Assembly (NCBI RefSeq): GCF_046119375.1
Contig: NW_027362764.1
Span: 604,066,001-604,130,000 of the forward strand
DNA from: Phyllobates terribilis
Lineage: Eukaryota
Reading direction: 5' to 3'
Length of the DNA stretch: 64,000 bases
Made by a program: the position numbers and the translations under genes
Shown here: one piece after another, positions 6,249 to 63,488 of the stretch
Position numbering within the stretch: position 1 is the first letter of the stretch
Layout: every line of letters begins with the position of its first letter
Notes under the pieces: generated by a model
Told to the model about the DNA's origin: nothing
The model's input: only the letters and a program-made list of their open reading frames with translations
The model's database searches: none

Positions 6249-7070
6249 TTAAAATGCGACACTGTTTCACCAAATTTCTGGAGAACATGATGTACGGCCA
6301 GACCATTGTGTTCCAGCTATATGGACATGTGACCATTGCAACCTATCACAGGTGCCGCAGTGTTGCATTTTACACCGCTGCAGCTACTGATTGACTGATA
6401 GTCACATACCTTTTATGCTGAATGTGGAAGCATGGAGACAAGAGAGAAGAGCCATGAACAAGAGTTGTAATGGATCGGTAAGGTGAATATTAATTAGCAT
6501 GTTGAGATAAAGCTATTTTTTTGGGCGGGGGAGTGGTGGGGGTTATGGGAGGGGTTAATTTGAGGGTGGACAGTCCTTTTAAAGAAGGTGTGATTTGACA
6601 ACTATGGGCCTAAGAACTAACAAGCAGGTTTTTGCTACCTGCCTGTTGTGCCCGGCACAGATCTCTGCCGACAAGTGGCAGTCACAGACATGTTAGCTGA
6701 GCAGTAGCTTTTCTTCCGCTCTGCTCTGTTGATTGGGCATGACTGTTGATTGACAACCGACTCCCTGGTGCCTTATCGGTCCCATCAACGGAGCAGCCCG
6801 GAAGAGGAAGAGCTACTGTGTTGACATCAAGCAGCAGAATCACCAGCAAAAAAAAAAATCAAATACTCCCGGATAAGCCCTTTAATAGTACTTCTCTACT
6901 CTCTGTTATCTTGCATGTAAGTAACTAAGAATAAATCTTAATTACCAGTGGGCTAAATTTGCTTACCTGTGAGTGAATTGCTAAAAACACATATGAGTAT
7001 TGGAGAGTTTCAGCAAGATGTTGTTGACACTTTATTTTCCTTTTTAATCTGTTTTTTTTTCTTTTTACAG

Positions 7071-7225
7071 ACATTTTCTCACTGATCTCTGATTCAGGTG
7101 GTGTCATGGTTTACCAGAAGTATGACCAGTTTTTGAAGGAAGTGCTGAAACTGCCAACCGCTGTGTTTGAAGGACCTTCATTTGGTTACACAGAGCAATC
7201 TGCAAGGTCTTGTTTCTCACAGCAG
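7071..7225 (+). CDS. dtna: dtna exon 5 ([52 protein letters not shown])
   Basis: TTTTACAG acceptor, GTATGA donor; 155 nt; phase continuous with exon 4. Confidence 0.97.
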
Positions 7226-9425
7226 GTATGAAGAATGCAGCATGATGATTATGTGGTGCTTTATAACATAATGGGTCTGATTCATCAAGACTGGCAATTT
7301 TCTTGCGGGTCTTGATGAGGGGCCATGGAGGAGTCGGACGCTCTTGATTCAATACGAGGCACACGACTCTTGATGAATTAGGAGCGTCTGACAAGTGACA
7401 TGCATCAGGCCAGAAATCTTACACTAGTCCCTGACTGGAGTAATATTTCTGCCGTAAGGAACGCCACAGCTCTTCATGGATTAGATCAGCTGTTGCGTCA
7501 CGTTCTTGTTGCACCCCGTCCCACCTAGCTTCGACCATTTTGGCAAAGCTGGGAGAAACTGGCGTGAAAATGGCAAAAGTTGCAAAGTTTAGGCACAACT
7601 CTGAGTTGCACCAAAATTTTGTGGCTTTTCAAAGCTTTTACACCACTTTTTTTGGCATAAAAGCTTTGATGAATCGGGCCCATTGGCTTCTATTTATAAT
7701 AGATGCTATGATGGATCCAAACTGGCACTAACTGGGCATTCTGGTATGTTTTAATGGCAAGAACAGCGCTGTAAACTTTGCAGTCAAAGATACGGAATTG
7801 CAGACTAAACCCCTAAAGGAGGCTATAAACATCAGTGTGAACAAAGTCTAATAATAAATAAAAAGATCCAAAGTTTTTAGTGACTCTGTGTTATAGATGT
7901 AATTACATGTTAAACGTACACGTGGTTTCGACTACAGAAATTGCCAATTTGGTTAGCCTTAAAGAGGTTGACCTATGAACAACCCCCTTTAAAATAATGC
8001 TGTTTTTAGCCAGAAGCAAATATTTATATGGAAAGCCAACGAGATCTGCACATTCTAGATCTACTGAAGGGAGAATATTTTCATCAGAACAGTTATATCC
8101 TCTGTTTAATCATTTATTAAAGTTTATCAAAGTAGTTAGTCATGTACAAAACTGTTTGTGCACAGAACATATCATGCCTGTGTGTGGCTCATTTTTGAAT
8201 AAAATATTTTATCATTACGTTTTTTTTCCCTGTTTCCTCCTGCTGGGATCCGTTACTGGTTTTGGCAAAAAAGTATGGAATGGAACATGGACCTCAGATA
8301 CAGGCATGTAAAGAAGCCCCTAAGCTGGCCACTTCATAATGACAAGTGATGGTTTTTTTTTTTGGAAATACACTGTTTATAGCACCAATTTACAAAGAAA
8401 ATCACCTAATGACATAAAAAATGTTTGCCCAAAAATGTTACTTTGAACAAGCGTAGTGTATTCTACGTTTTGATGTTAGAAGGAATGTCATAAAAATGAC
8501 CTATTGCTTAAAACAGGTTTTTATGCTTTTTTTTTGTTGTTTTGTTTTTTTTCAATTTTCCAGATCACGATCTATATTAAAATTTCACACTGGCCACTAA
8601 ACCTAATATTAGACTGATTGATCTTGTTCTTTTCAGCAGCCACATGTACATAAGAGGCAATAGACTGGCTCTAACCCTATTAACTTTCATTCAAGTATTT
8701 TCTGAGCAAACTGTGATCTGGGCAAATGTCACTGAAAAGAGTGTGAGGAGGTGATTTGTGACATCACCTATTTTAAATGGGGGGATCCTATGTTATAGAT
8801 GGGTCACCTTTTATCTTAACCCTGCCTGTGATAAAATATATTCTAAAAAAGAAAAAACAAAGATACCAGTACACAAAGGGTATTAACCCGACAAAAACAA
8901 AATAGAACGTGTATGTAAGCTGCTAACCTGATGGCATTGTGCTAAGTGCACGACAACCCAGAGGGCATATCAATCATGTAGCAGGATGCTACATCCAGGG
9001 GTCCCACCGGATTCTGGATGGTATGTCATGATACATGTACAACAAAATTACCTCCTTAATCGGCCCTGCTTCCCCAAAGACAGTGACGTGCTACAACGTA
9101 GAACTTCTTTGCAAAAAAAGTTCTTCATCGTTGCACCTTATTGCATGTGCATGTCTTCGATCTAGGAAAGCAGCGCTGATTAAGGAGGTTGTTTTCTTTT
9201 GCATGTGTCTTATGATAATAAGACTGCTGAAATGTCATCTGTACAATACAAGAAGTGTGAGTATATAGTATTAGGTAGTCTGTGTGAAAGCTGCAACATT
9301 TTGTCTTTTTTTTGTTTTGTAAATAGTACAGTTGTTCAAAAATATTCACAGGACCATGGTCCAGAGGCCATGACTGTAGTCTGTGGCCGACCCGACCAGA
9401 GTCTTGCGAATCTCATACCTGCTGG

Positions 9426-11271
9426 CAGGGCCGGCTCCAGGTTTTTCTGGGGCCCGGGCGAAAGATTCTCAGTGGCCCCTTTAACACATACACGATTCAT
9501 GATGCACAGATACCGCAGAGAAATATATATATATAATATAGTACAATGCAAAGATTTCACTTCTTACATTACATGAGTGATATCTATTGTAAATTCCACA
9601 ATAGCTCAGAAACCGGTGAATCGCTCCACACAGAATACTGGCCCCCATATAAGGCTCCATACGGAATACTGGCCCCCATATAAGGCTCCATACGGAATAC
9701 TGGCCCCCATATAAGGCTCCATACGGAATACTGGCCCCCATATAAGGCTCCATACCGAATACTGGCCCCCATATAAGGCTCCATACGGAATACTGGCCCC
9801 CATATAAGGCTCCATACGGAATACTGGCCCCCATATAACGCTTCATACGGTTTACTGGCCCCCATATAAGGCTCCATACGGAATACTGGCCCCCATATAA
9901 GGCTCCATACGGAATACTGGCCCCCATATAACGCTTCATACGGAATACTGGCCCCCATATAAGGCCCCATACGGAATACTGGCCCCCATATAAGGCCCCA
10001 TAAGGAATACTGGCCCCCATATAAGGCCCCATACGGAATACTGGCCCCCATATAAGGCCCCATACGGAATACTGGCCCCCATATAAGGCTCCATACGGAA
10101 TACTGGCCCCCATATAAGGCTCCATACGGAATACTGGCCCCCATATAAGGCCCCATACGGAATACTGGCCCCCATATAAGGCCCCATACGGAATACTGGC
10201 CCCCATATAAGGCCCCATAAGGAATACTGGCCCCCATATAAGGCCCCATACGGAATACTGGCCCCCATATAAGGCCCCATACGGAATACTGGCCACCATA
10301 TAAGGCTCCATGCGGAATACTGGCCCCCATATAAGGCTCCATGCGGAATACTGGCCCCCATATAAGGCTCCATACGGAATACTGCCCCCCATATAAGGCT
10401 CCATACGGAATACTGCCCCCCATATAAGGCTCCATACAGAATACTGGCCCCCATATAACGCTCCATACAGGATACTGGTCCCCTTATAAAACTCCATACA
10501 GGATACTGGTCCCCTTATAACACTCCATACAGGATACCGGTCCCCTTATAACGCTGCATGCAGGCTGTTACCCCCCACATAATGCCCCATACAGGCTGTC
10601 CCCCCCTTATAATGCTCCATGCAGGCTGTTACCCCCCACATAATGCCCCATACAGCCCCCCCCCCTTTTAATGCTCCATGCAGGCTGTTACCCCCCACAT
10701 AATGCCCCATACAGGCTGCCCCCCCTCCTTATAATGCTCCATGCAGGCTGCCCCCCCCCCCTTATAATGCCCCATGCAGGCTGTTCCCCACCTTATAATG
10801 CCCCATGCAGGATGCCCCCCCTCTTTATAATGCCCCATGCAGGATGCCCCCCCCCTTCTCTACTGCCTCATGCCTCCATACATTAAAAAAAAAAATCAAA
10901 TACTCACCTCCCTTCTCCTCACCTGCTGCTTGCTGCCTGCTGCTCGGGTCCGAACTCCAGCGTTGTCGGCGTCTTCCCGCTCAGCGCTCCCTGTGACGGC
11001 TCAGGGGAGGGCGCGGTGTAAAGACATCACCGCACCCTCTGACCTGACACGTCACAGGAAGCGCAGAGCAGGAAGACAGCTGATCTGCGGAGGCACGGGG
11101 AGAGGTAAGTATCCTGCTGCCGGGGCCCTGAGCAAGCGGCGGAGAAAGGCGGCGCTGACACCGCTCTCCTCCGCCCATAGCCCAGCGGGGTGCGCGACCG
11201 CCAGTGGGCCCCTCTGCCTGCTCAGGGCCCCGGCATTTGCCCGGGTGCGCCGGGTGCTGACGCCGGCCCTG
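9426..11271. mobile_element. Non-autonomous hAT element carrying a minisatellite
   Basis: Perfect 8-bp TSD CCTGCTGG at 9418-9425 and 11272-11279. TIRs CAGGGCCGGC / GCCGGCCCTG. No transposase ORF. Confidence 0.9.
9633..10860. repeat. 31-bp minisatellite (27 units to about 10469) grading into degenerate C-rich units of about 30 bp
   Basis: Unit GAATACTGGCCCCCATATAAGGCTCCATACG repeats with period 31. From about 10470 the units drift to CAGGATACTGGTCCCCTTATAA... and then CAGGCTGTTACCCCCCACATAATGCCCCATA. Confidence 0.97.
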
Positions 11272-12189
11272 CCTGCTGGCTTCACAGACACCTCTTCTAA
11301 TTAGTAGGCCTGACGCAACGTCATCATTGTGGCACAATGCATGTGTGACATTGCACTGGTCCAGTCTTCACAACTTACCAATGTAGCTGCTGGAATGGGG
11401 TCCTGAAAATCTTTTCACTCAACTCTATTAGGTAGTGAAAATGAAAATTGAAAAAAAAATGCTAAAAATGTTAACACATTTAACCTAAAAGCCATATTTA
11501 AGGAGTTGATCATTTTTTTTCATGATCCGGTCCATTTAAGTTGTATTTCTTCTGCCTTTGTTCTTCATTATTTTTGAAACTCATGTAAAGACTAAAGGGT
11601 TAGATGGGTTGTCTGGTCTAAAATGACAAGTCTGCAGTCAATCTGTGTGTCTGCAGACTTGTGAATCCTCATATAGCACTCACTATGCACTGTGAGGATT
11701 CTCCGGTGTCAGCGCTGGCATACTTCTGGCCAGTTTCTGACTAGACTGCTTCCGGTGTGCCCAGTACGTGACTGCCGTTCCTGGTGCTGACACCAGAGAA
11801 TCCTCATAACGCGCTATGTTAAGATTCACATGTCTGCAGTCACATAGAGTGACAGCAGACTTGTCATTTTAGACCGGACAGCCCCTTTAAGTTTGCATTA
11901 CTTGTATCTAGTGTTCATGTAGACAGTCATGTGGCCATTCTTAACTGGTTGCAGTAGGGTTTTTCCCTCATGTAGTTAACCATTTAGGCACAATTATGAA
12001 AATAGCATACTTAAGGCACAGATCCGCAAGAGGGGAGAGGGAAATAAAAATTGTTACATTGTATATTGTACACCAATAACAAGACATAATGTAAATACCA
12101 TTCATCGCAATTAGTCTTACTCATTAATATTTAATCTATATGTATATGCTAATAGTGATTTTTCTCATCTTTGTTTTTAATCCAAACAG

Positions 12190-12295
12190 AAAAAAGTTAG
12201 CTTAAATTTATTTTTGGACACACTTATGTCTGACCCACCACCTCAGTGTCTTGTCTGGTTACCTCTTCTACATCGACTGGCGAATGTAGAAAATG
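12190..12295 (+). CDS. dtna: dtna exon 6 ([35 protein letters not shown])
   Basis: AACAG acceptor, GTAAGT donor; 106 nt. Confidence 0.97.
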
Positions 12296-12679
12296 GTAAG
12301 TACAGTCTGCAATAAAGCTTTGTACTATGTAGACATTCTATGTTTTTCTTAGGATAGAGTATCCATATCAGATCTATGAGTATCTAACTCCCAACACCGA
12401 AACCGATTAGTGGGGGTCTGGCTCCGGCACTCACACCGATCAGTAGACTGAAGGTTGAGTGATATGTCACCATTATTGTTTACCAGACATAACTGTATAC
12501 TTTTTCCCTCGGCTGTACCTGGTATTACAGTTCAGTCTCACTCACTAATGGGACTGATCCACACAGAGCTGCAGGACGAGGCACAGATCCTACAATGGAA
12601 AGTGGATGGCGCTGTATACGATAAACCATGAAAGGGACACAAATGTCACAAGTCAGACTTCCACTGATTGGGAATAGCT

Positions 12680-12844
12680 NNNNNNNNNNNNNNNNNNNNN
12701 NNNNNNNNNNNNNNNNNNNNNNNNNNNNNNNNNNNNNNNNNNNNNNNNNNNNNNNNNNNNNNNNNNNNNNNNNNNNNNNNNNNNNNNNNNNNNNNNNNNN
12801 NNNNNNNNNNNNNNNNNNNNNNNNNNNNNNNNNNNNNNNNNNNN
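12680..12844. other. Assembly gap or masked run (165 N)
   Basis: Run of N. Confidence 0.99.
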
Positions 12845-14434
12845 GGACACACCTCATTTAAAGATTTTTCTGTATTTTCTTGACTATGAAAATTGTACAT
12901 TCACACTGAAGGCATCAAAACTAAGAATTAACACATGTGGAATTATATACTTAACAAAAAGTATGAAACAACTGAAAATATGTCTTACATTGTAGGTTCT
13001 TCAAAGTAGCCAACTTTTGCTTTGATGACTGCTTTGCACACTCTTGGCATTCTCTTGATGAGCTTCAAGAGGTAGTCACCGGAAATGGTCTTCCAATAAT
13101 CTTGAAGGAGTTCTCAGAGATGCTTAGCACTTGTTGGCCCTTTTGCCTTCACTCTGCTGTCCAGCTCACCCCAAACCATCTCGATTGTGTTCAGGTCTGG
13201 TGACTGTGGAGGCCAGGTCATCTTGCCTAGCACCCCATCACTCTTCTTCTTGGTCAAATAGCCCTTACACAGCCTGGAGGTGTGTTTGGGGTCATTGTCC
13301 TGTTGAAAAATAAATGATGGCCTAAATAAACGCAAATCTGATGGAATAGCATGCCGCTGCAAGATGCTGTAGTAGCCATGCTGGTTCAGTATGCCTTCAA
13401 TTTTGAATAAATCCCCAACAGTGTCACCAGCAAAGCACCCCCACACCATCACACCTCCTCCTCCATGCTTCACGGTGGGAACCAGGCATGTAGAGTCCAT
13501 CCGTTCAACTTTTCTGCGTCGCACAAAGACACGGTGGTTGGAACCAAAGATCTCAAATATGGACTCATCAGACCAAAGCACAGATTTCCACTGGTCTAAT
13601 GTCCATTCCTTGTGTTCTTTAGCCCAAACAAGTCTCTTCTGCTTGTTGCCTGTCCTTAGCAGTGGTTTCCTAGCAGCTATTTTACCATGAAGGCCTGCTG
13701 CACAAAGTCACCTCTTAACAGTTGTTAAAGAGATGTGTCTGCTGCTAGAACTCTGTGTGGCATTGACCTGGTCTCTAATCTGAGCTGCTGTTAACCTGCG
13801 CTTTCTGATGCTGGTGACTCCAATAAACTTATCCTCAGAAGCAGAGGTGACTCTTGGTCTTCCTTTCCTGGGGCGGTGCTCATGTGAGCCAATTTCTTTG
13901 TAGCGCTTGATGGTTTTGCAACTGCACTTGGGGACACTTTCAAAGTTTTCCCAATTTTTCGGACTGACTGACCTTCATTTCTTAAAGTAATGATGGCCAC
14001 TCGTTTTTCTTTACTTAGCTGCTTTTTTCTTGCCATAATACAAATTCTAACAGTCTATTCAGTAGGACTTTCAGCTGTGTATCCACCTGACTTCTGCACA
14101 ACACAACTGATGGTCCCAGCCCCATTTATAAGGCAAGAAATCCCACTTATTAAACCTGACAGGGCACACCTGTGAAGTGAAAACCATTTCCGGTGACTAC
14201 CTCTTGAAGCTCATCAAGAGAATGCCAAGAGTGTGCAAAGCAGTCATCAAAGCAAAAGGTGGCTACTTTGAAGAACCTAGAATATAAGACATATTTTCAG
14301 TTGTTTCACACTTTTTTGTTAAGTATATAATTCCACATGTGTTAATTCATAGTTTTGATGCCTTCAGTGTGAATGTACAATTTTCATAGTCATGAAAATA
14401 CAGGAAAATCTTTAAATGAGAAGGTGTGTCCAAA
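12845..14434 (-). mobile_element. Tc1 transposon with long (about 245-bp) inverted repeats and a frameshifted transposase; both termini lost in N gaps
   Basis: Inverted repeats at about 12845-13089 and 14182-14434. Minus-strand ORFs MARKKQLSKEKRVAII (from 14036) and LWSDESIFEIFG...QQDNDPKH...WPPQSPDLNTIE (13114-13581). Confidence 0.92.
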
Positions 14435-14574
14435 NNNNNNNNNNNNNNNNNNNNNNNNNNNNNNNNNNNNNNNNNNNNNNNNNNNNNNNNNNNNNNNNNN
14501 NNNNNNNNNNNNNNNNNNNNNNNNNNNNNNNNNNNNNNNNNNNNNNNNNNNNNNNNNNNNNNNNNNNNNNNNNN
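14435..14574. other. Assembly gap or masked run (about 140 N)
   Basis: Run of N. Confidence 0.98.
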
Positions 14575-16109
14575 TTTAAGTCTGATGGTGAATTTGAACC
14601 GGTTAATATGATCCGGATTCTAAAGAATGCTCATTCCCAACTATAAGCTCGTGTAAACATGACGGTGATCACCCGATGCTCAAGCAAAAAATGCTCCTTC
14701 TTGGGGTGATCAGATCTTTTATGCTGGTATAAAAATCATTATCAACCGTACTTCACCTATGTAAACCAAGGAGGTGCTCCCGATAACAACATGATGATGC
14801 ATGGGGACAGATTGTTCATATCAACGGTCATTTTGCTCCCATGTATATTCAACAGCCTGTGTAAACAGGCAGGTAAATTTGTGCTGATCAACTTAGTTGA
14901 CTGGTTCTTGTTAAAGTGCATTGATGGGTCGAAATCGACTTGTTTAAATGCACCATCAGAGATTTCTTCTCTCTGGGTCTAAAGACTGGATTAGTGATGG
15001 CATTCACTGATCATTCTGACTCTGCAGTAAATGGGAGGTTATGTGATATCGGCTGTCAGATTGTCGAGGAAGTTGCTAAATGACGCAATCTAAAAAGATG
15101 AAAAAAGTAGAGGATGTTTGGGTGGATCACAGGGTGTGTTGCCTGAAGACAATTGGCCTCATTTATCAAACATGCCTAAAAGAAAAACTTTTTGCAGCCC
15201 ATAGTGACCAATCAGAGCTCAGCTATTGTTTGAAGAGCTCTGGTAAAATAAAAACTGCATTTTGATTGGTTGCTATGGGCAACAAAGATAATTCTAATTT
15301 TGGACATTTTTTTTCCTAAAACTTCCCCCTCGGGGCCTCATTTATCAAATTGGTTTATATAAGCTACAACCAGTTTTGCCAAATCTACCCCAATAAACCT
15401 ACAGTACAGAGTATATTTATGATATCTTCCTTTTATGAAAAGAGATTCTCCTTAAAGTAAGCCTGTCAGAAACTTTTACCATCCCCTCAAACCCCAGCCA
15501 TTAATATGATTGTGTAGGCCTTTAAAATATAAGTCAGTGCTGATCCAACAGCGAGAAATCGCATTTTGAAGTTGTGTCTGTAGTGCATTGGGATGTGACG
15601 ATGCTCTTCTAGCTTCTCAGCCTCATGCTTTATCTCCTACCTAGGAGCCTCCTTCCCTGGATGATTGACAGATGGTTTGCTTTGGTACATGGCCACTGAC
15701 CTGTCAATCAGCTAGAGGAAGGAGCTGTTGGGTGAGAAATATAGTGCAAGGCTGAGAAGGTGGAAGTGCACCGTCACGCCCCAATGCACTTCCAGACACA
15801 ATGTGATTTCTCACTGCTAAATCAGCACTTTGCGGTCATAAAGGGTCAACTGGCTTATCTTTTAAGGGGCTACACAATTATTAATGGTTTTGGAGGGGAA
15901 AATTTCTGACAGACTCCCCTTCAGATACAATTGGGACGTTCCTTTCAGTAAAGTAAGATCTTCCACTTCACCCCCCGAAGTAAAGAAGTGACTGTCATTT
16001 CCTTTGGTGTAAAGACAGTAATATAAATGGACTAGAAGAGCGGTCTGACCAGATAATAACCTTTCACTCTTATGTTTTAATTGTAAAAAATCTTCTCTGT
16101 CTGTCTTAG

Positions 16110-16276: not shown

Positions 16277-16362
16277 GTAAGAGAAGGTTCACTGGGCTCG
16301 GCAGCTGCACCGTACAGAGGCGCACACAAGAGTGGACTAACCCAGACAGGGCAGGGCCGGCA

Positions 16363-38556: not shown

Positions 38557-38649
38557 GTTACAATACAGCCTGGATGTGGCAGACAGGCTGGCTGATGAAC
38601 ATGTTCTCATCGGGGTATATGCCAATATGCTGCAGAACAACCTTTCACG
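38557..38649 (+). CDS. dtna: dtna exon 13 cassette, syntrophin-binding site (LQYSLDVADRLADEHVLIGVYANMLQNNLSR)
   Basis: TTCTAG acceptor, CG|GTTAGT donor; 93 nt; phase 2-2. Confidence 0.96.
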
Positions 38650-39078
38650 GTTAGTTAAGGCTTGGCAAATGTCTTGTTTGTACAAAATGGAGGTTGACGC
38701 AAATGATGGTCACTTGTTGTTGAAACTTAGTGAGCCAAGTCAGATGCCTTCAGCATGTGCTCAGGTGGCCCGGCTACGGGAGAGATCTGTGTAAGAAGGG
38801 ACTGAGCTTGCATCATGCTCTCGATACAAAGCTGCGTCGACTCTGGTTTTACAGATGATGTTATTATTCCTTTTCACTATTTATTTTTTACACCGATACT
38901 AATCTGATTTAGAAGTGTGATTACTTTATTCATTTGTCTGCAGGAAGTATTGTCTAGTTTTAAGCAAGTTTTCATAATTTCATTCAAATGAGGCTTATTT
39001 ATGTTTTCATTAAAATAGTATGACAATATCCCAGTTATGAAGGCTGCAATGCGCTTCATGTAGTCAGAAATCTGTCTA

Positions 39079-40394
39079 CAGCCAACCAATAGCAATGCCT
39101 CACAATGGGAGCACCGCACAGCCAACCAATAGCAATGCCTCACAATGGGAGCGCCGCACAGCCAACCAATAGCAATGCCTCACAATGGGAGCGCCGCACA
39201 GCCAACCAATAGCAATGCCTCACAATGGGAGCACCGCACAGCCAACCAATAGCAATGCCTCACAATGGGAGCACCGCACAGCCAACCAATAGCAATGCCT
39301 CACAATGGGAGCACCGCACAGCCAACCAATAGCAATGCCTCACAATGGGAGCACCGCACAGCCAACCAATAGCAATGCCTCACAATGGGAGCACCGCACA
39401 GCCAACCAATAGCAATGCCTCACAATGGGAGCACCGCACAGCCAACCAATAGCAATGCCTCACAATGGGAGCACCGCACAGCCAACCAATAGCAATGCCT
39501 CACAATGGGAGCACCGCACAGCCAACCAATAGCAATGCCTCACAATGGGAGCACCGCACAGCCAACCAATAGCAATGCCTCACAATGGGAGCACCGCACA
39601 GCCAACCAATAGCAATGCCTCACAATGGGAGCACCGCACAGCCAACCAATAGCAATGCCTCACAATGGGAGCACCGCACAGCCAACCAATAGCAATGCCT
39701 CACAATGGGAGCACCGCACAGCCAACCAATAGCAATGCCTCACAATGGGAGCACCGCACAGCCAACCAATAGCAATGCCTCACAATGGGAGCACCGCACA
39801 GCCAACCAATAGCAATGCCTCACAATGGGAGCACCGCACAGCCAACCAATAGCAATGCCTCACAATGGGAGCACCGCACAGCCAACCAATAGCAATGCCT
39901 CACAATGGGAGCACCGCACAGCCAACCAATAGCAATGCCTCACAATGGGAGCACCGCACAGCCAACCAATAGCAATGCCTCACAATGGGAGCACCGCACA
40001 GCCAACCAATAGCAATGCCTCACAATGGGAGCACCGCACAGCCAACCAATAGCAATGCCTCACAATGGGAGCACCGCACAGCCAACCAATAGCAATGCCT
40101 CACAATGGGAGCACCGCACAGCCAACCAATAGCAATGCCTCACAATGGGAGCACCGCACAGCCAACCAATAGCAATGCCTCACAATGGGAGCACCGCACA
40201 GCCAACCAATAGCAATGCCTCACAATGGGAGCACCGCACAGCCAACCAATAGCAATGCCTCACAATGGGAGCACCGCACAGCCAACCAATAGCAATGCCT
40301 CACAATGGGAGCACCGCACAGCCAACCAATAGCAATGCCTCACAATGGGAGCACCGCACAGCCAACTAATAGCAATGCCTCACAATGGGAGCAC
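39079..40394. repeat. Highly homogeneous 40-bp minisatellite, about 33 copies
   Basis: Unit CAGCCAACCAATAGCAATGCCTCACAATGGGAGCACCGCA; only three variant units seen. Confidence 0.99.
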
Positions 40395-61224: not shown

Positions 61225-63488
61225 TGCCCAAAGATAACAAAAGTATCCTCGAAGTGATACCTTTATTGGCTAACCAGAAAAAAATATATATATTTGCGAG
61301 CTTTCAGAGCACAGGGGCTCCTTCACGCAGGTTTACAAATGAATAAGACAAGAGCATAACATTTAAGAGATATTACAGCAGGACATTTGTTCATGAGGCG
61401 GAAGGGGTGATGCCTCCTAAAGATAAGCCAAGGAAATCAAATTAGGGATTTTGTTACAAATGGAGAGGCAGTGGAAATATTCACTTAATTATCTGGAGTC
61501 TGTCTGGTGGAGGTGTGAATTGTATCCATGTAGTCAGTCATAAATCCAGGTGTTAAATTGAGTCCTATTGTCAAAGAATTGAACATCCTTATTAGTTTGA
61601 ATTCCCAAATTCTTCTCTGTCGTCCTTAAAATGACCTTTCAATATTAAGACTTTTAAATCGGTCATACAGTGTCCAGGTCCAGAGAAGTGTTTTCCCACA
61701 GGCCTGTCCAGTTTATTCCTGAATGTGTGTTTGTAGATTCATTTTTGTTTATACAGTTAGGTCCATATATATTTGGACAGAGACAACATTTTTCTAATTT
61801 TGGTTCTAGACATTACCACAATGAATTTTAAACAAAACAATTCAGATGCAGTTGAAGTTCAGACTTTCAGCTTTCATTTGAGGGTATCCACATTAAAATT
61901 GGATGAAGGGTTTAGGAGTTTCAGCTCCTTAACATGTGCCACCCTGTTTTTAAAGGGACCAAAAGTAATTGGACAATTGACTCCAAGGCTATTTCATGGA
62001 CAGGTGTGGGCAATCCCTTCGTTATGTCATTCTCAATTAAGCAGATAAAAGGCCTGGAGTTGATTTGAGGTGTGGTGCTTGCATTTGGCAGGTTTTGCTG
62101 TGAAGTAAACATGCGGTCAAAGGAGCTCTCCATGCAGGTGAAACAAGCCATCCTTAAGCTGCAAAAACAGAAAAAAAACATCCGAGAAATTGCTACAATA
62201 TTAGGAGTGGCAAAATCTACAGTTTGGTACATCCTGAGAAAGAAAGAAAGCACTGGTGAACTCATCAATGCAAAAAGCCATGGGCGCCCACGGAAGACAA
62301 CAGTGGTGGATGATCGCAGAATAATCTCCATGGTGAAGAGAAACCCCTTCACAACAGCCAACCAAGTGAACAACACTCTCCAGGAGGTAGGCGTATCAAT
62401 ATCCAAATCTACCATAAAGAGAAGACTGCATGAAAGTAAATACAGAGGGTTCACTGCACGGTGCAAGCCACTCATGAGCATCAAGAATAAAAAGGCTAGA
62501 CTGGACTTTGCTAAAAAACATCTAAAAAGCCAGCACAGTTCTGGAAGAACATTCTTTGGACAGATGAAACCAAGATCAACCTCTACCAGAATGATGGAAA
62601 GAGAAAAGTATGGCGAAGGCGTGGTACAGCTCATGATCCAAAGCATACCACATCATCTGTAAAACACGGCGGAGGCAGTGTGATGGCTTGGGCATGCATG
62701 GCTGCCAGTGGCACTGGGTCACTAGTGTTGATGATGTGACACAGGACAGAAGCAGCCGAATGAATTCTGATGTATTCAGAGCCATACTGTATGCTCAGAT
62801 CCAGCCAAATGCAGCCAAACTGATTGGTCGTCGTTTCATACTACAGATGGACAATGACCCAAAACATAAAGCCAAAGCAACCCAGGAGTTCATTAAAGCA
62901 AAGAAGTGGAATATTCTTGAATGGCCAAGTCAGTCACCTGATCTCAACCCAATTGACCATGCATTTCACATGTTAAAGACTAAACTTCAGACAGAAAGGC
63001 CCACAAAACAAACAACAACTGAAAACCACCGCAGTGAAGGCCTGGCAGAGCATCAAAAAGGAGGAAACACAGCGTCTGGTGATGTCCATGAGTTCAAGAC
63101 TTCAGGCAGTCATTGCCAACAAAGGGTTTTCAACCAAGTACTAGAAATGAACATTTTATTTACAATTATTTAATCTGTCCAATTACTTGTAGTCCCTTTA
63201 AAAACAGGGTGGCACATGTTAAGGAGCTGAAACGCCTAAACCCTTCATCCAATTTTAATGTGGATACCCTCAAATGAAAGCTGAAAGTCTGAACTTCAAC
63301 TGCATCTGAATTGTTTTGTTTAAAATTGATTGTGGTAATGTCTAGAACCAAAATTAGAAAAATGTTGTCTCTGTCCAAATATATATGGACCTAACTGTAG
63401 TTTCCCCAATATAGAAACCTCCAGGGCACCTGGTACATTGTATCATGTACACCACATTGGAGGATGTACATGAAAAGACATCCATGAT
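61225..63488 (-). mobile_element. Penelope-like element 3' fragment (GIY-YIG endonuclease), split by a Tc1 insertion into 61225-61751 and 63400-63488
   Basis: Minus strand reads FSCTSSNVVYMIQCTRCPGGFYIGET | ...DRPVGKHFSGPGHCMTDLKVLILKGHF...EFKLIRMFNSLTIGLNLTPGFM, with frameshifts. Confidence 0.82.
61754..63397 (+). mobile_element. Full-length Tc1 (1644 bp) with IRs of about 220 bp and a frameshifted transposase
   Basis: TA-CAGTTAGGTCC...GGACCTAACTG-TA. ORF from 62111 MRSKELSMQVKQAILKL..., then TDETK, MDNDPKH and WPSQSPDLNPID in shifted frames. Confidence 0.95.

What the first reader, a model, noticed from the sequence alone, without database searches (positions are those of the whole stretch)
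9633..10469. Transposon-borne array of 24 perfect CArG (SRF) boxes with adjacent Ets-like sites in intron 5 of a muscle and brain gene
Seen: each 31-bp unit contains CCATATAAGG, an exact CC(A/T)6GG. It is intact in 24 of 27 units; units 7, 10 and 27 read CCATATAACG. Most units also carry ACGGAA 9 bp upstream of the box. Established: CC(A/T)6GG is the serum response factor site, and an adjacent (C/A)(C/A)GGA(A/T) is the TCF/Elk ternary-complex site; together they form a serum response element. SRF is a major muscle regulator. Inference: this hAT element delivers a ready-made multimerised SRE, either an enhancer or an SRF sink, into dtna. If the family is dispersed it could seed an SRF regulon. 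The CpG in ACGGAA could make it methylation-switchable.
Basis: partly seen in the sequence, partly recalled or inferred. Interest (0 to 1): 0.75.

Follow-up and report, generated by a model that had tools for sequence, protein, structure and literature searches.

The report
Frog hAT transposon minisatellite with CArG motifs
A small, very abundant frog "cut-and-paste" transposon sitting in an intron of the dystrobrevin gene carries a 31-base tandem repeat whose unit happens to spell a perfect binding site for the muscle regulator SRF. The motif count is real, but it comes from a few duplication events and nothing shows that it regulates anything.

Summary
There are 27 units of 31 bp at 9633-10469, 24 read CCATATAAGG, and units 7, 10 and 27 read CCATATAACG. 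ACGGAA lies 9 bp upstream in 19 units.

The array sits in a 1,846-bp non-autonomous hAT-type element (9426-11271) with a CAGGGCCGGC terminal inverted repeat and a perfect 8-bp target-site duplication, CCTGCTGG. The element lies between two consecutive dystrobrevin exons.

Public reads show the family is hugely repeated, very roughly 10^4-10^5 copies. Depth drops exactly at these ends, and a second species label also holds the family.

The 24 boxes are not 24 independent events. Unit variants show 1-, 3- and 7-unit duplications, and the 12 older units on the 3' side carry no CArG. One 31-bp unit has about a 0.2% chance of holding a CArG. Another array in this window carries 32 CCAAT boxes.

CCATATAAGG is a competent site: nine copies form the synthetic E9NS promoter. 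In vitro SRF binding is therefore likely. A role as a dtna enhancer, an SRF sink or a regulon seed is untested, and the copy number argues against it.

This scan has already found several hAT elements with internal arrays in this genome, with other repeat units. This is a new member of a known kind.

The parts
9418..9425 (.). Left copy of the 8-bp target-site duplication, CCTGCTGG
   Evidence: Identical to 11272-11279 and directly abuts the terminal inverted repeat.
9426..9440 (+). Left terminal inverted repeat, CAGGGCCGGC (10 perfect; 14 of 15 with the right end)
   Evidence: Contig pieces of three runs begin exactly at 9426 (table 8).
9441..9622 (+). Left subterminal arm. It holds a possible proto-unit at about 9473-9496 resembling the older repeat units.
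   Evidence: Local alignment scores 24 against a shuffle mean of 14.2 (sd 2.4, maximum 26). This is weak.
9623..10459 (+). Young homogenised block of 27 units of 31 bp. It holds 24 CCATATAAGG, 3 CCATATAACG and 19 ACGGAA.
   Evidence: The variant string shows 1-, 3- and 7-unit duplications.
10460..10857 (+). Older, degenerate part of the same array: 12 units of 28-33 bp. The box-equivalent reads CCTTATAA(A/C)(A/G), CCACATAATG, CCTTATAATG and similar. None is a CArG.
10858..11256 (+). GC-rich right arm (CpG observed/expected 0.75 against 0.42 for the window). It carries consensus 5' splice-site motifs on both strands: AG|GTAAGT at 11103-11110 (+) and AG|GTGAGT at 10909-10902 (-).
   Evidence: No Pfam match to its ORF and no Rfam match.
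11257..11271 (-). Right terminal inverted repeat
   Evidence: At 11271, 108 contigs of run X5 continue into unlike sequences (agreement 0.35), which indicates many insertion sites (table 7).
11272..11279 (.). Right copy of the target-site duplication, CCTGCTGG
7071..7225 (+). Upstream dystrobrevin exon (residues ~151-201)
   Evidence: phmmer E = 5e-26 to dystrobrevin alpha, 8yt8_C. AG and GT splice sites are visible.
12190..12295 (+). Downstream dystrobrevin exon (residues ~202-236)
   Evidence: phmmer E = 3e-17 to dystrobrevin alpha. Splice sites are visible.

Best explanation
This is an ordinary insertion of a very high-copy, non-autonomous hAT DNA transposon into a dystrobrevin intron. About two thirds of the element is a 31-bp minisatellite. 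The array grew by replication slippage or unequal exchange, and one unit variant was recently amplified into a 27-unit block. That variant happens to read CCATATAAGG, with ACGGAA 9 bp upstream. The 24 CArG boxes are therefore a by-product of amplifying one unit. Naked DNA would probably bind SRF in vitro. In the animal the array is most likely silenced repeat DNA like the rest of its family, with no dedicated effect on dtna.

Shown: the anatomy, the element ends, the dispersal and the duplication history. Inferred: silencing and neutrality.
For: - The TIR and the perfect 8-bp TSD define a 1,846-bp element.
- Summed contig depth is 10^5-10^6 inside the element and 0-45 outside it in two independent samples, with breaks exactly at 9426 and 11271. 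In run X5, 53,853 contigs are at least 90% alike. A second species label also holds the family.
- There is no transposase in the element or in the window; only Tc1 fragments are present.
- The unit-variant string ABBBCBDEBDFGHGGBBGGHGIJJKKL shows repeated BD(E/F) and GHG(G/I) blocks and the JJ, KK and BB pairs. The longest perfect self-match, 141 bp, is at lag 217.
- All 12 older units lack the final GG of the box.
- The edge units 1 and 27 read ACAGAA rather than ACGGAA.
- A second intronic array (39078-40394) carries 32 AACCAATAG CCAAT boxes, which shows how readily arrays multiply a transcription-factor motif.
- MITE-borne satellites are known in frogs, for example Xstir and miDNA4 (PMC9659126).
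- Earlier notes of this scan report several hAT elements with internal arrays in this genome.
Against: - CCATATAAGG is not merely a formal match. Nine tandem copies of it gave the maximal induction among synthetic CArG promoters in human cells (PMC6497884).
- The Ets-like site lies upstream of the box and reads towards it on the top strand. From memory, this is the orientation seen in the c-fos SRE.
- Within the young block, only 1 of the 10 box columns varies against 10 of the 21 other columns (Fisher p = 0.055). This is confounded by shared descent.
- At 10428, about 70% of the summed depth reads G, so box-bearing units are common in the family.
- No chromatin, methylation or expression data were available.
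Confidence: 0.78

Rival explanations
1. The array is a remnant of the transposon's own regulatory region. In the autonomous parent, a tandem array lies between the 5' end and the transposase gene. Multimerised SRF/Ets sites there would drive transposase transcription, for instance in early embryos, as SRF does for MERVL in mouse. This deletion derivative would keep the array, a promoter-like GC-rich segment and a first-exon splice donor.
For: - The order along the + strand is array, then a CpG-richer segment (observed/expected 0.75), then a consensus AG|GTAAGT donor at 11103-11110, then about 160 bp and the right TIR.
- Earlier scan notes place tandem arrays directly in front of the transposase gene in this genome's hAT families (not checked by me).
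- SRF sites on a transposable element that drive its expression are documented (PMC11960700).
- Box-bearing units are common in the family.
Against: - No autonomous partner with these ends was found or could be read.
- The older units lack the box.
- A donor-like motif also lies on the opposite strand at 10909-10902, so such motifs may be chance.
- No transcript data were available.
Confidence: 0.09
2. One reading: the inserted array acts as an SRF/TCF-dependent (or MRTF-dependent) intronic enhancer of dtna in muscle or brain.
For: - The array holds 24 exact consensus CArG boxes, 21 of them with an Ets-like site.
- Multimerised CCATATAAGG is an active inducible promoter element in reporters (PMC6497884).
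- From memory, the 31-bp period is about three helical turns, so all sites would face the same side of the helix.
Against: - The same module exists at roughly 10^4-10^5 places, so any effect would not be specific to dtna.
- There is no sign of constraint, since the older units decayed away from the box.
- In the literature search, no paper that holds Dtna, CArG and SRF together has them in its title or abstract; the texts were not opened.
- Transposable elements in vertebrate genomes are usually methylated (established knowledge).
Confidence: 0.07
3. The SRF sink reading: the family as a whole titrates SRF (or TCF/MRTF) and so buffers SRF-dependent transcription genome-wide.
For: The number of family-borne boxes probably exceeds the ~2,577 SRF-bound sites of a mouse fibroblast by orders of magnitude (PMC5179500).
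Against: - For the same reason, open sites in such numbers would be expected to be harmful, so silencing is the simpler expectation.
- There is no evidence of accessibility.
- The copy number estimate is rough.
Confidence: 0.03

Closest known systems
MITE- or transposon-borne minisatellites and satellites in frogs (Xstir on Xmix in Xenopus laevis; miDNA4 in X. tropicalis), as reviewed in PMC9659126
   Same: A non-autonomous TIR element whose interior is a tandem array that expands and is homogenised, in a family amplified to high copy number in an anuran genome.
   Different: - These ends are of the hAT type (8-bp TSD, CAGGG...). miDNA4 is Tc1/mariner-derived, and Xmix has no superfamily listed in the review's table.
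- The unit is 31 bp.
- No free-standing satellite derived from this array was shown here.
hAT transposons with internal tandem arrays already noted by this scan in the same genome (110-bp and ~149-bp units)
   Same: The same superfamily, the same genome and the same architecture: an array inside the element that varies in unit number between copies.
   Different: The repeat unit differs (31 bp), and this element is a short deletion derivative without transposase. I could not compare the sequences.
Serum response element (c-fos and Egr-1 type: CArG box plus TCF Ets site) and the synthetic E9NS promoter, (CCATATAAGG)x9 (PMC6497884)
   Same: The 10-bp box is identical to the E9NS element. An Ets-like hexamer lies upstream on the same strand.
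   Different: - The boxes are 31 bp apart, not contiguous.
- The Ets-to-box gap is 9 bp, against 2-3 bp in c-fos (from memory).
- There is no minimal promoter context.
- There are no binding or activity data.
- The site is not conserved within its own array.
Transposable-element-borne MADS-box or SRF sites: the SRF motif in the MT2C_Mm/MT2_Mm (MERVL) LTRs (PMC11960700) and PHERES1 sites on helitrons in Arabidopsis (PMC6914339)
   Same: A dispersed transposable-element family carrying a consensus site for a MADS-box factor.
   Different: Binding and regulatory effect were demonstrated in those cases, and the site is single per element. Here the site is multimerised by tandem duplication and untested.

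Membership tests
hAT superfamily, non-autonomous element | 8-bp target-site duplication | tested here: met
   CCTGCTGG at 9418-9425 and 11272-11279, identical in both copies.
hAT superfamily, non-autonomous element | Short terminal inverted repeats beginning (C/T)A(A/G)NG | tested here: met
   CAGGGCCGGC at both ends, 10 of 10 and then 14 of 15 positions. The consensus start is quoted from memory.
hAT superfamily, non-autonomous element | Dispersed copies sharing the same ends | tested here: met
   Depth steps and contig ends lie at 9426 and 11271 in 4 runs, and 108 divergent continuations follow 11271.
hAT superfamily, non-autonomous element | Autonomous partner encoding a hAT transposase (BED finger, hAT dimerisation domain) with matching ends | not testable with these tools
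   None is present in the window, where only Tc1 domains are found. The rest of the genome could not be read.
Serum response element (SRF + TCF) | CC(A/T)6GG core | tested here: met
   24 copies of CCATATAAGG.
Serum response element (SRF + TCF) | Adjacent (C/A)(C/A)GGA(A/T) Ets site | tested here: met
   21 of 27 units, + strand, 9-bp gap. By my estimate, the chance of such a hexamer within 31 bp is about 11%.
Serum response element (SRF + TCF) | SRF binding and signal-dependent activation | not testable with these tools
   No ChIP, EMSA or reporter was possible. There is only indirect support from E9NS (PMC6497884).
Serum response element (SRF + TCF) | Evolutionary retention of the site | tested here: not met
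   The 12 older units of the same array have no CArG. Orthologous loci could not be examined.
Transposon-borne minisatellite | Tandem array internal to a TIR/TSD-bounded element | tested here: met
   The array at 9623-10857 lies inside the element at 9426-11271.
Transposon-borne minisatellite | Unit number differs between copies of the family | tested here: inconclusive
   Contig joints skip 33-500 bp within 10030-10888 in runs X5, X8 and X10 (table 5). These are short contigs, and many joints have sides under 30 nt.

The most novel reading that the evidence does not exclude
The 31-bp array is a genuine SRF/TCF-responsive module that this hAT family uses for its own transcription. With roughly 10^4-10^5 copies it would have spread ready-made serum response elements through a frog genome, and some of them would have been co-opted near muscle or immediate-early genes. 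That would be the largest transposon-borne SRF site reservoir described in a vertebrate.
Probability: 0.06. Interest if true: 0.65.

Novelty: new member of a known kind. Interest (0 to 1): 0.22.

Why it matters
If the array were shown to bind SRF in vivo, it would be a natural counterpart of engineered multimerised CArG promoters. It would also be a test case for how a DNA transposon could spread a MADS-box factor site. As the evidence stands, it mainly illustrates a general caution: a tandem array multiplies whatever short motif its unit contains, so motif counts in arrays are not evidence of function. The practical value is a well-delimited family member (ends, TSD, array history) for repeat annotation of this frog genome.

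Tried and rejected
- **Array encodes a repeat protein.** The minus strand is open in all three frames (338, 283 and 176 aa). The word-based protein search found no relative at E <= 1e-5 among 8,000 candidates. The ORFs follow from a unit that has no stop codon on that strand. Rejected as an artefact.
- **Structured RNA.** No Rfam family reaches its gathering score in 8000-13000.
- **Other copies in the window.** blastn with 9-nt words found only a 21-nt match at 6848-6868. A third CAGGGCCGGC at 16352 is within chance expectation.
- **Other copies in public collections.** An exact 21-mer of the unit is absent from metagenome contigs and viral contigs. These collections are not expected to hold frog DNA.
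- **Earlier findings by sequence.** The look-up was blank.
- **Literature link between DTNA and SRF/CArG.** Only four papers hold all three terms, and none has them in its title or abstract. I did not open them.
- **Proto-unit in the left arm.** The score is suggestive but within reach of shuffles, so I keep it only as a weak lead.
- **Presence or absence of this insertion in other individuals.** One X5 contig (11249-11452, no mismatches) spans the right junction with only 23 nt inside the element. That is below the tool's 31-nt criterion, so it is supportive only.

Full report
**Observation**

Tandem Repeats Finder reports a 31-bp array at 9623-10559 (30.2 copies, 95% matches). The array continues in degenerate form, as 59-63-bp double units, to about 10857.

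A regular-expression count gives 27 CC(A/T)6GG in the whole window. Of these, 24 are CCATATAAGG at an exact 31-bp spacing between 9645 and 10420, and only 3 lie in the other ~61.8 kb.

ACGGAA is present in 19 of 27 units. Two more units read AAGGAA, so 21 fit (C/A)(C/A)GGA(A/T). All are on the + strand and 9 bp upstream of the box. The description is accurate to the base.

**The carrier**

CAGGGCCGGC occurs at 9426 on the + strand and at 11271 on the - strand, and the two ends agree at 14 of 15 positions. They are flanked by a perfect 8-bp direct repeat, CCTGCTGG, at 9418-9425 and 11272-11279. An 8-bp target-site duplication with CAGGG-type ends is the hAT signature; the consensus is quoted from memory.

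The element is 1,846 bp long and has no transposase. The only transposase domains in the window are Tc1-type. It is therefore a non-autonomous hAT-type element, and about two thirds of it is the array.

**The host gene**

The exons on either side are 7071-7225 and 12190-12295. They match residues 151-201 and 202-236 of dystrobrevin, with E = 5e-26 and 3e-17, and dystrobrevin alpha is the best solved-structure hit. The element therefore lies in the intron between two consecutive dystrobrevin exons. I did not verify that this is intron 5, or that the gene is the alpha rather than the beta paralogue, beyond the ranking of these hits.

**Dispersal of the family**

Contigs of four public runs were laid on 8900-11600.
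- In two independent DNA samples of the same species label, summed contig depth is 10^5 to 4x10^6 inside 9426-11271 and 0-45 outside it.
- In run X5, 53,853 contigs lie on the element at 90% identity or more.
- Contig pieces begin exactly at 9426 in three runs.
- At 11271, 108 contigs of X5 continue into mutually unlike sequence (agreement 0.35), which is what many different insertion sites give.

Dividing right-arm depth by the depth of single-copy flank contigs gives about 3-5x10^4 copies in both samples. The right-arm depths are 4.7-6.7x10^5 in X5 and 1.4-1.7x10^5 in X8, and the flank depths are about 12 and about 4.7. The tool warns that summed contig depth is not a copy number, so I take this only as an order of magnitude, 10^4-10^5.

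A small run under a second species label (X12) also holds the family, including an 82-nt piece without any mismatch that covers the first CArG unit. At 10428, about 70% of the depth reads G and 30% reads C, so box-bearing units are common in the family and not private to this copy.

No listed run is on record as RNA, so expression could not be judged.

Earlier follow-up notes of this scan call this a poison-frog genome; I did not check that. For the dyeing poison frog, 265,361 hAT elements are annotated (PMC11152451).

**History of the array**

Each of the 27 young units was labelled by its differences from the consensus, which gives the string ABBBCBDEBDFGHGGBBGGHGIJJKKL.
- The repeated BD(E/F) block marks a 3-unit duplication.
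- The repeated GHG(G/I) block marks a 7-unit duplication. The longest perfect self-match, 141 bp, is at lag 217.
- The pairs JJ, KK and BB mark single-unit duplications.

On the 3' side, 12 older units follow, and their box-equivalent reads CCTTATAAAA, CCTTATAACA, CCTTATAACG, CCACATAATG, CCTTATAATG and similar. None is a CArG.

The two edge units of the young block read ACAGAA rather than ACGGAA. The simplest reading is that one unit variant carrying both motifs was amplified recently. The 24 boxes therefore stand for a handful of events and have not been retained over time in this array.

Within the young block, 1 of the 10 box columns varies against 10 of the 21 others (Fisher p = 0.055). 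The cells are not independent, and the whole 3' half of the unit is quiet, so I do not read this as constraint.

A possible proto-unit in the left arm, at about 9473-9496, resembles the older units, but its score is within reach of shuffles.

**Chance**

Under the window's composition, a 31-bp unit holds a CC(A/T)6GG with probability 0.23%. From the observed background density the figure is 0.15%. An Ets-like hexamer on either strand within 31 bp has roughly an 11% chance by my own estimate.

These are small odds for one named motif. The window supplies its own control: another intronic array, 39078-40394 (40 bp x 33 copies, 99% identity), carries 32 copies of AACCAATAG, a CCAAT box.

**Would it bind SRF?**

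CCATATAAGG is a competent site. A synthetic promoter made of nine tandem copies of exactly this 10-mer (E9NS) gave the highest induction among tested CArG multimers, and it responds to radiation, cisplatin and resveratrol in human cells (PMC6497884). I therefore expect SRF to bind a naked unit in vitro. That is an inference.

Whether SRF binds in the animal is a different matter. A mouse fibroblast has about 2,577 high-confidence SRF sites, most of them in active compartments (PMC5179500). This family alone probably offers orders of magnitude more boxes. If they were open, SRF titration on that scale would be expected to be harmful. Silencing of the family, as is usual for vertebrate transposons, is the simpler expectation, and it is also inferred.

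CpG observed/expected in the array is 0.48, close to the window's 0.42.

**A more interesting rival**

Along the + strand, the array is followed by three features in order:
- a CpG-richer segment (observed/expected 0.75);
- a consensus AG|GTAAGT donor at 11103-11110;
- only about 160 bp more before the right end.

Earlier notes of this scan place tandem arrays directly in front of the transposase gene in this genome's hAT families (not checked by me). The element could therefore be a deletion derivative that keeps the parent's upstream array, promoter and first exon, with the SRF/Ets motifs serving the transposon's own expression. SRF does this for MERVL LTRs (PMC11960700), and PHERES1 sites on helitrons are a plant parallel (PMC6914339).

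Against this reading, a donor-like motif also lies on the other strand (10909-10902), the older units lack the box, and I could not read any autonomous copy.

**Comparison with known systems, and verdict**

The architecture matches transposon-borne minisatellites known from frogs, such as Xstir and miDNA4 (PMC9659126). It also matches the hAT arrays this scan has already found several times in this genome with other repeat units.

It meets the sequence criteria of a serum response element. It fails the one retention test I could run, and the binding and activity criteria could not be tested.

I file it as a new member of a known kind: a real, well-delimited hAT insertion whose CArG count is a product of tandem amplification. 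The regulatory reading is possible but unsupported.

**Limits**

- No N stretch was filled or looked up.

Noticed in passing
window:39078-40394: A 40-bp unit repeated 33 times at 99% identity, in another dystrobrevin intron just downstream of the exon at about 38560-38650. Each unit carries AACCAATAG, a CCAAT box, giving 32 copies. I did not establish whether it sits in a transposon.
   Followed up: partly
window:30194-30555: A degenerate telomere-like array (TTAGGG, CTAGGG and TTGGGG variants) inside an intron, i.e. an interstitial telomeric-type repeat.
   Followed up: no
window:432-891: Two adjacent arrays, 80 bp x 2 and 49 bp x 5.9 (97% matches), in a purine-skewed stretch at the start of the window.
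   Followed up: no
window:12702-14574: A Tc1/mariner remnant (DDE_3 ORF at 13114-13581 on the - strand) framed by about 390-bp inverted repeats that are 96-98% complementary (12702-13093 against 14179-14574). An N run starting at about 12681 touches its left arm and was left alone.
   Followed up: partly
window:11600-11890: A MITE-like palindrome (78-nt arms, 85% complementary, with a nested 21-nt pair) about 330 bp downstream of the hAT element. Similar small palindromes lie at 9030-9209 and 15582-15790.
   Followed up: no
window:10902-10909 and 11103-11110: Consensus 5' splice-site motifs on both strands flank the GC-rich right arm of the hAT element: AG|GTGAGT on the - strand and AG|GTAAGT on the + strand. 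The + strand motif is in the sense of dtna and could give chimeric or alternative first-exon transcripts.
   Followed up: partly
window:6848-6868: A 21-nt exact match (an A-run followed by TCAAATACTC) to 10885-10905 of the hAT right arm, lying about 200 bp upstream of the dystrobrevin exon. It is probably a scrap of a related repeat.
   Followed up: no
window:4838-5404 and 61921-63173: Further Tc1/mariner transposase fragments (HTH_Tnp_Tc3_2 and DDE_3 domains), in keeping with a genome rich in Tc1 elements.
   Followed up: partly
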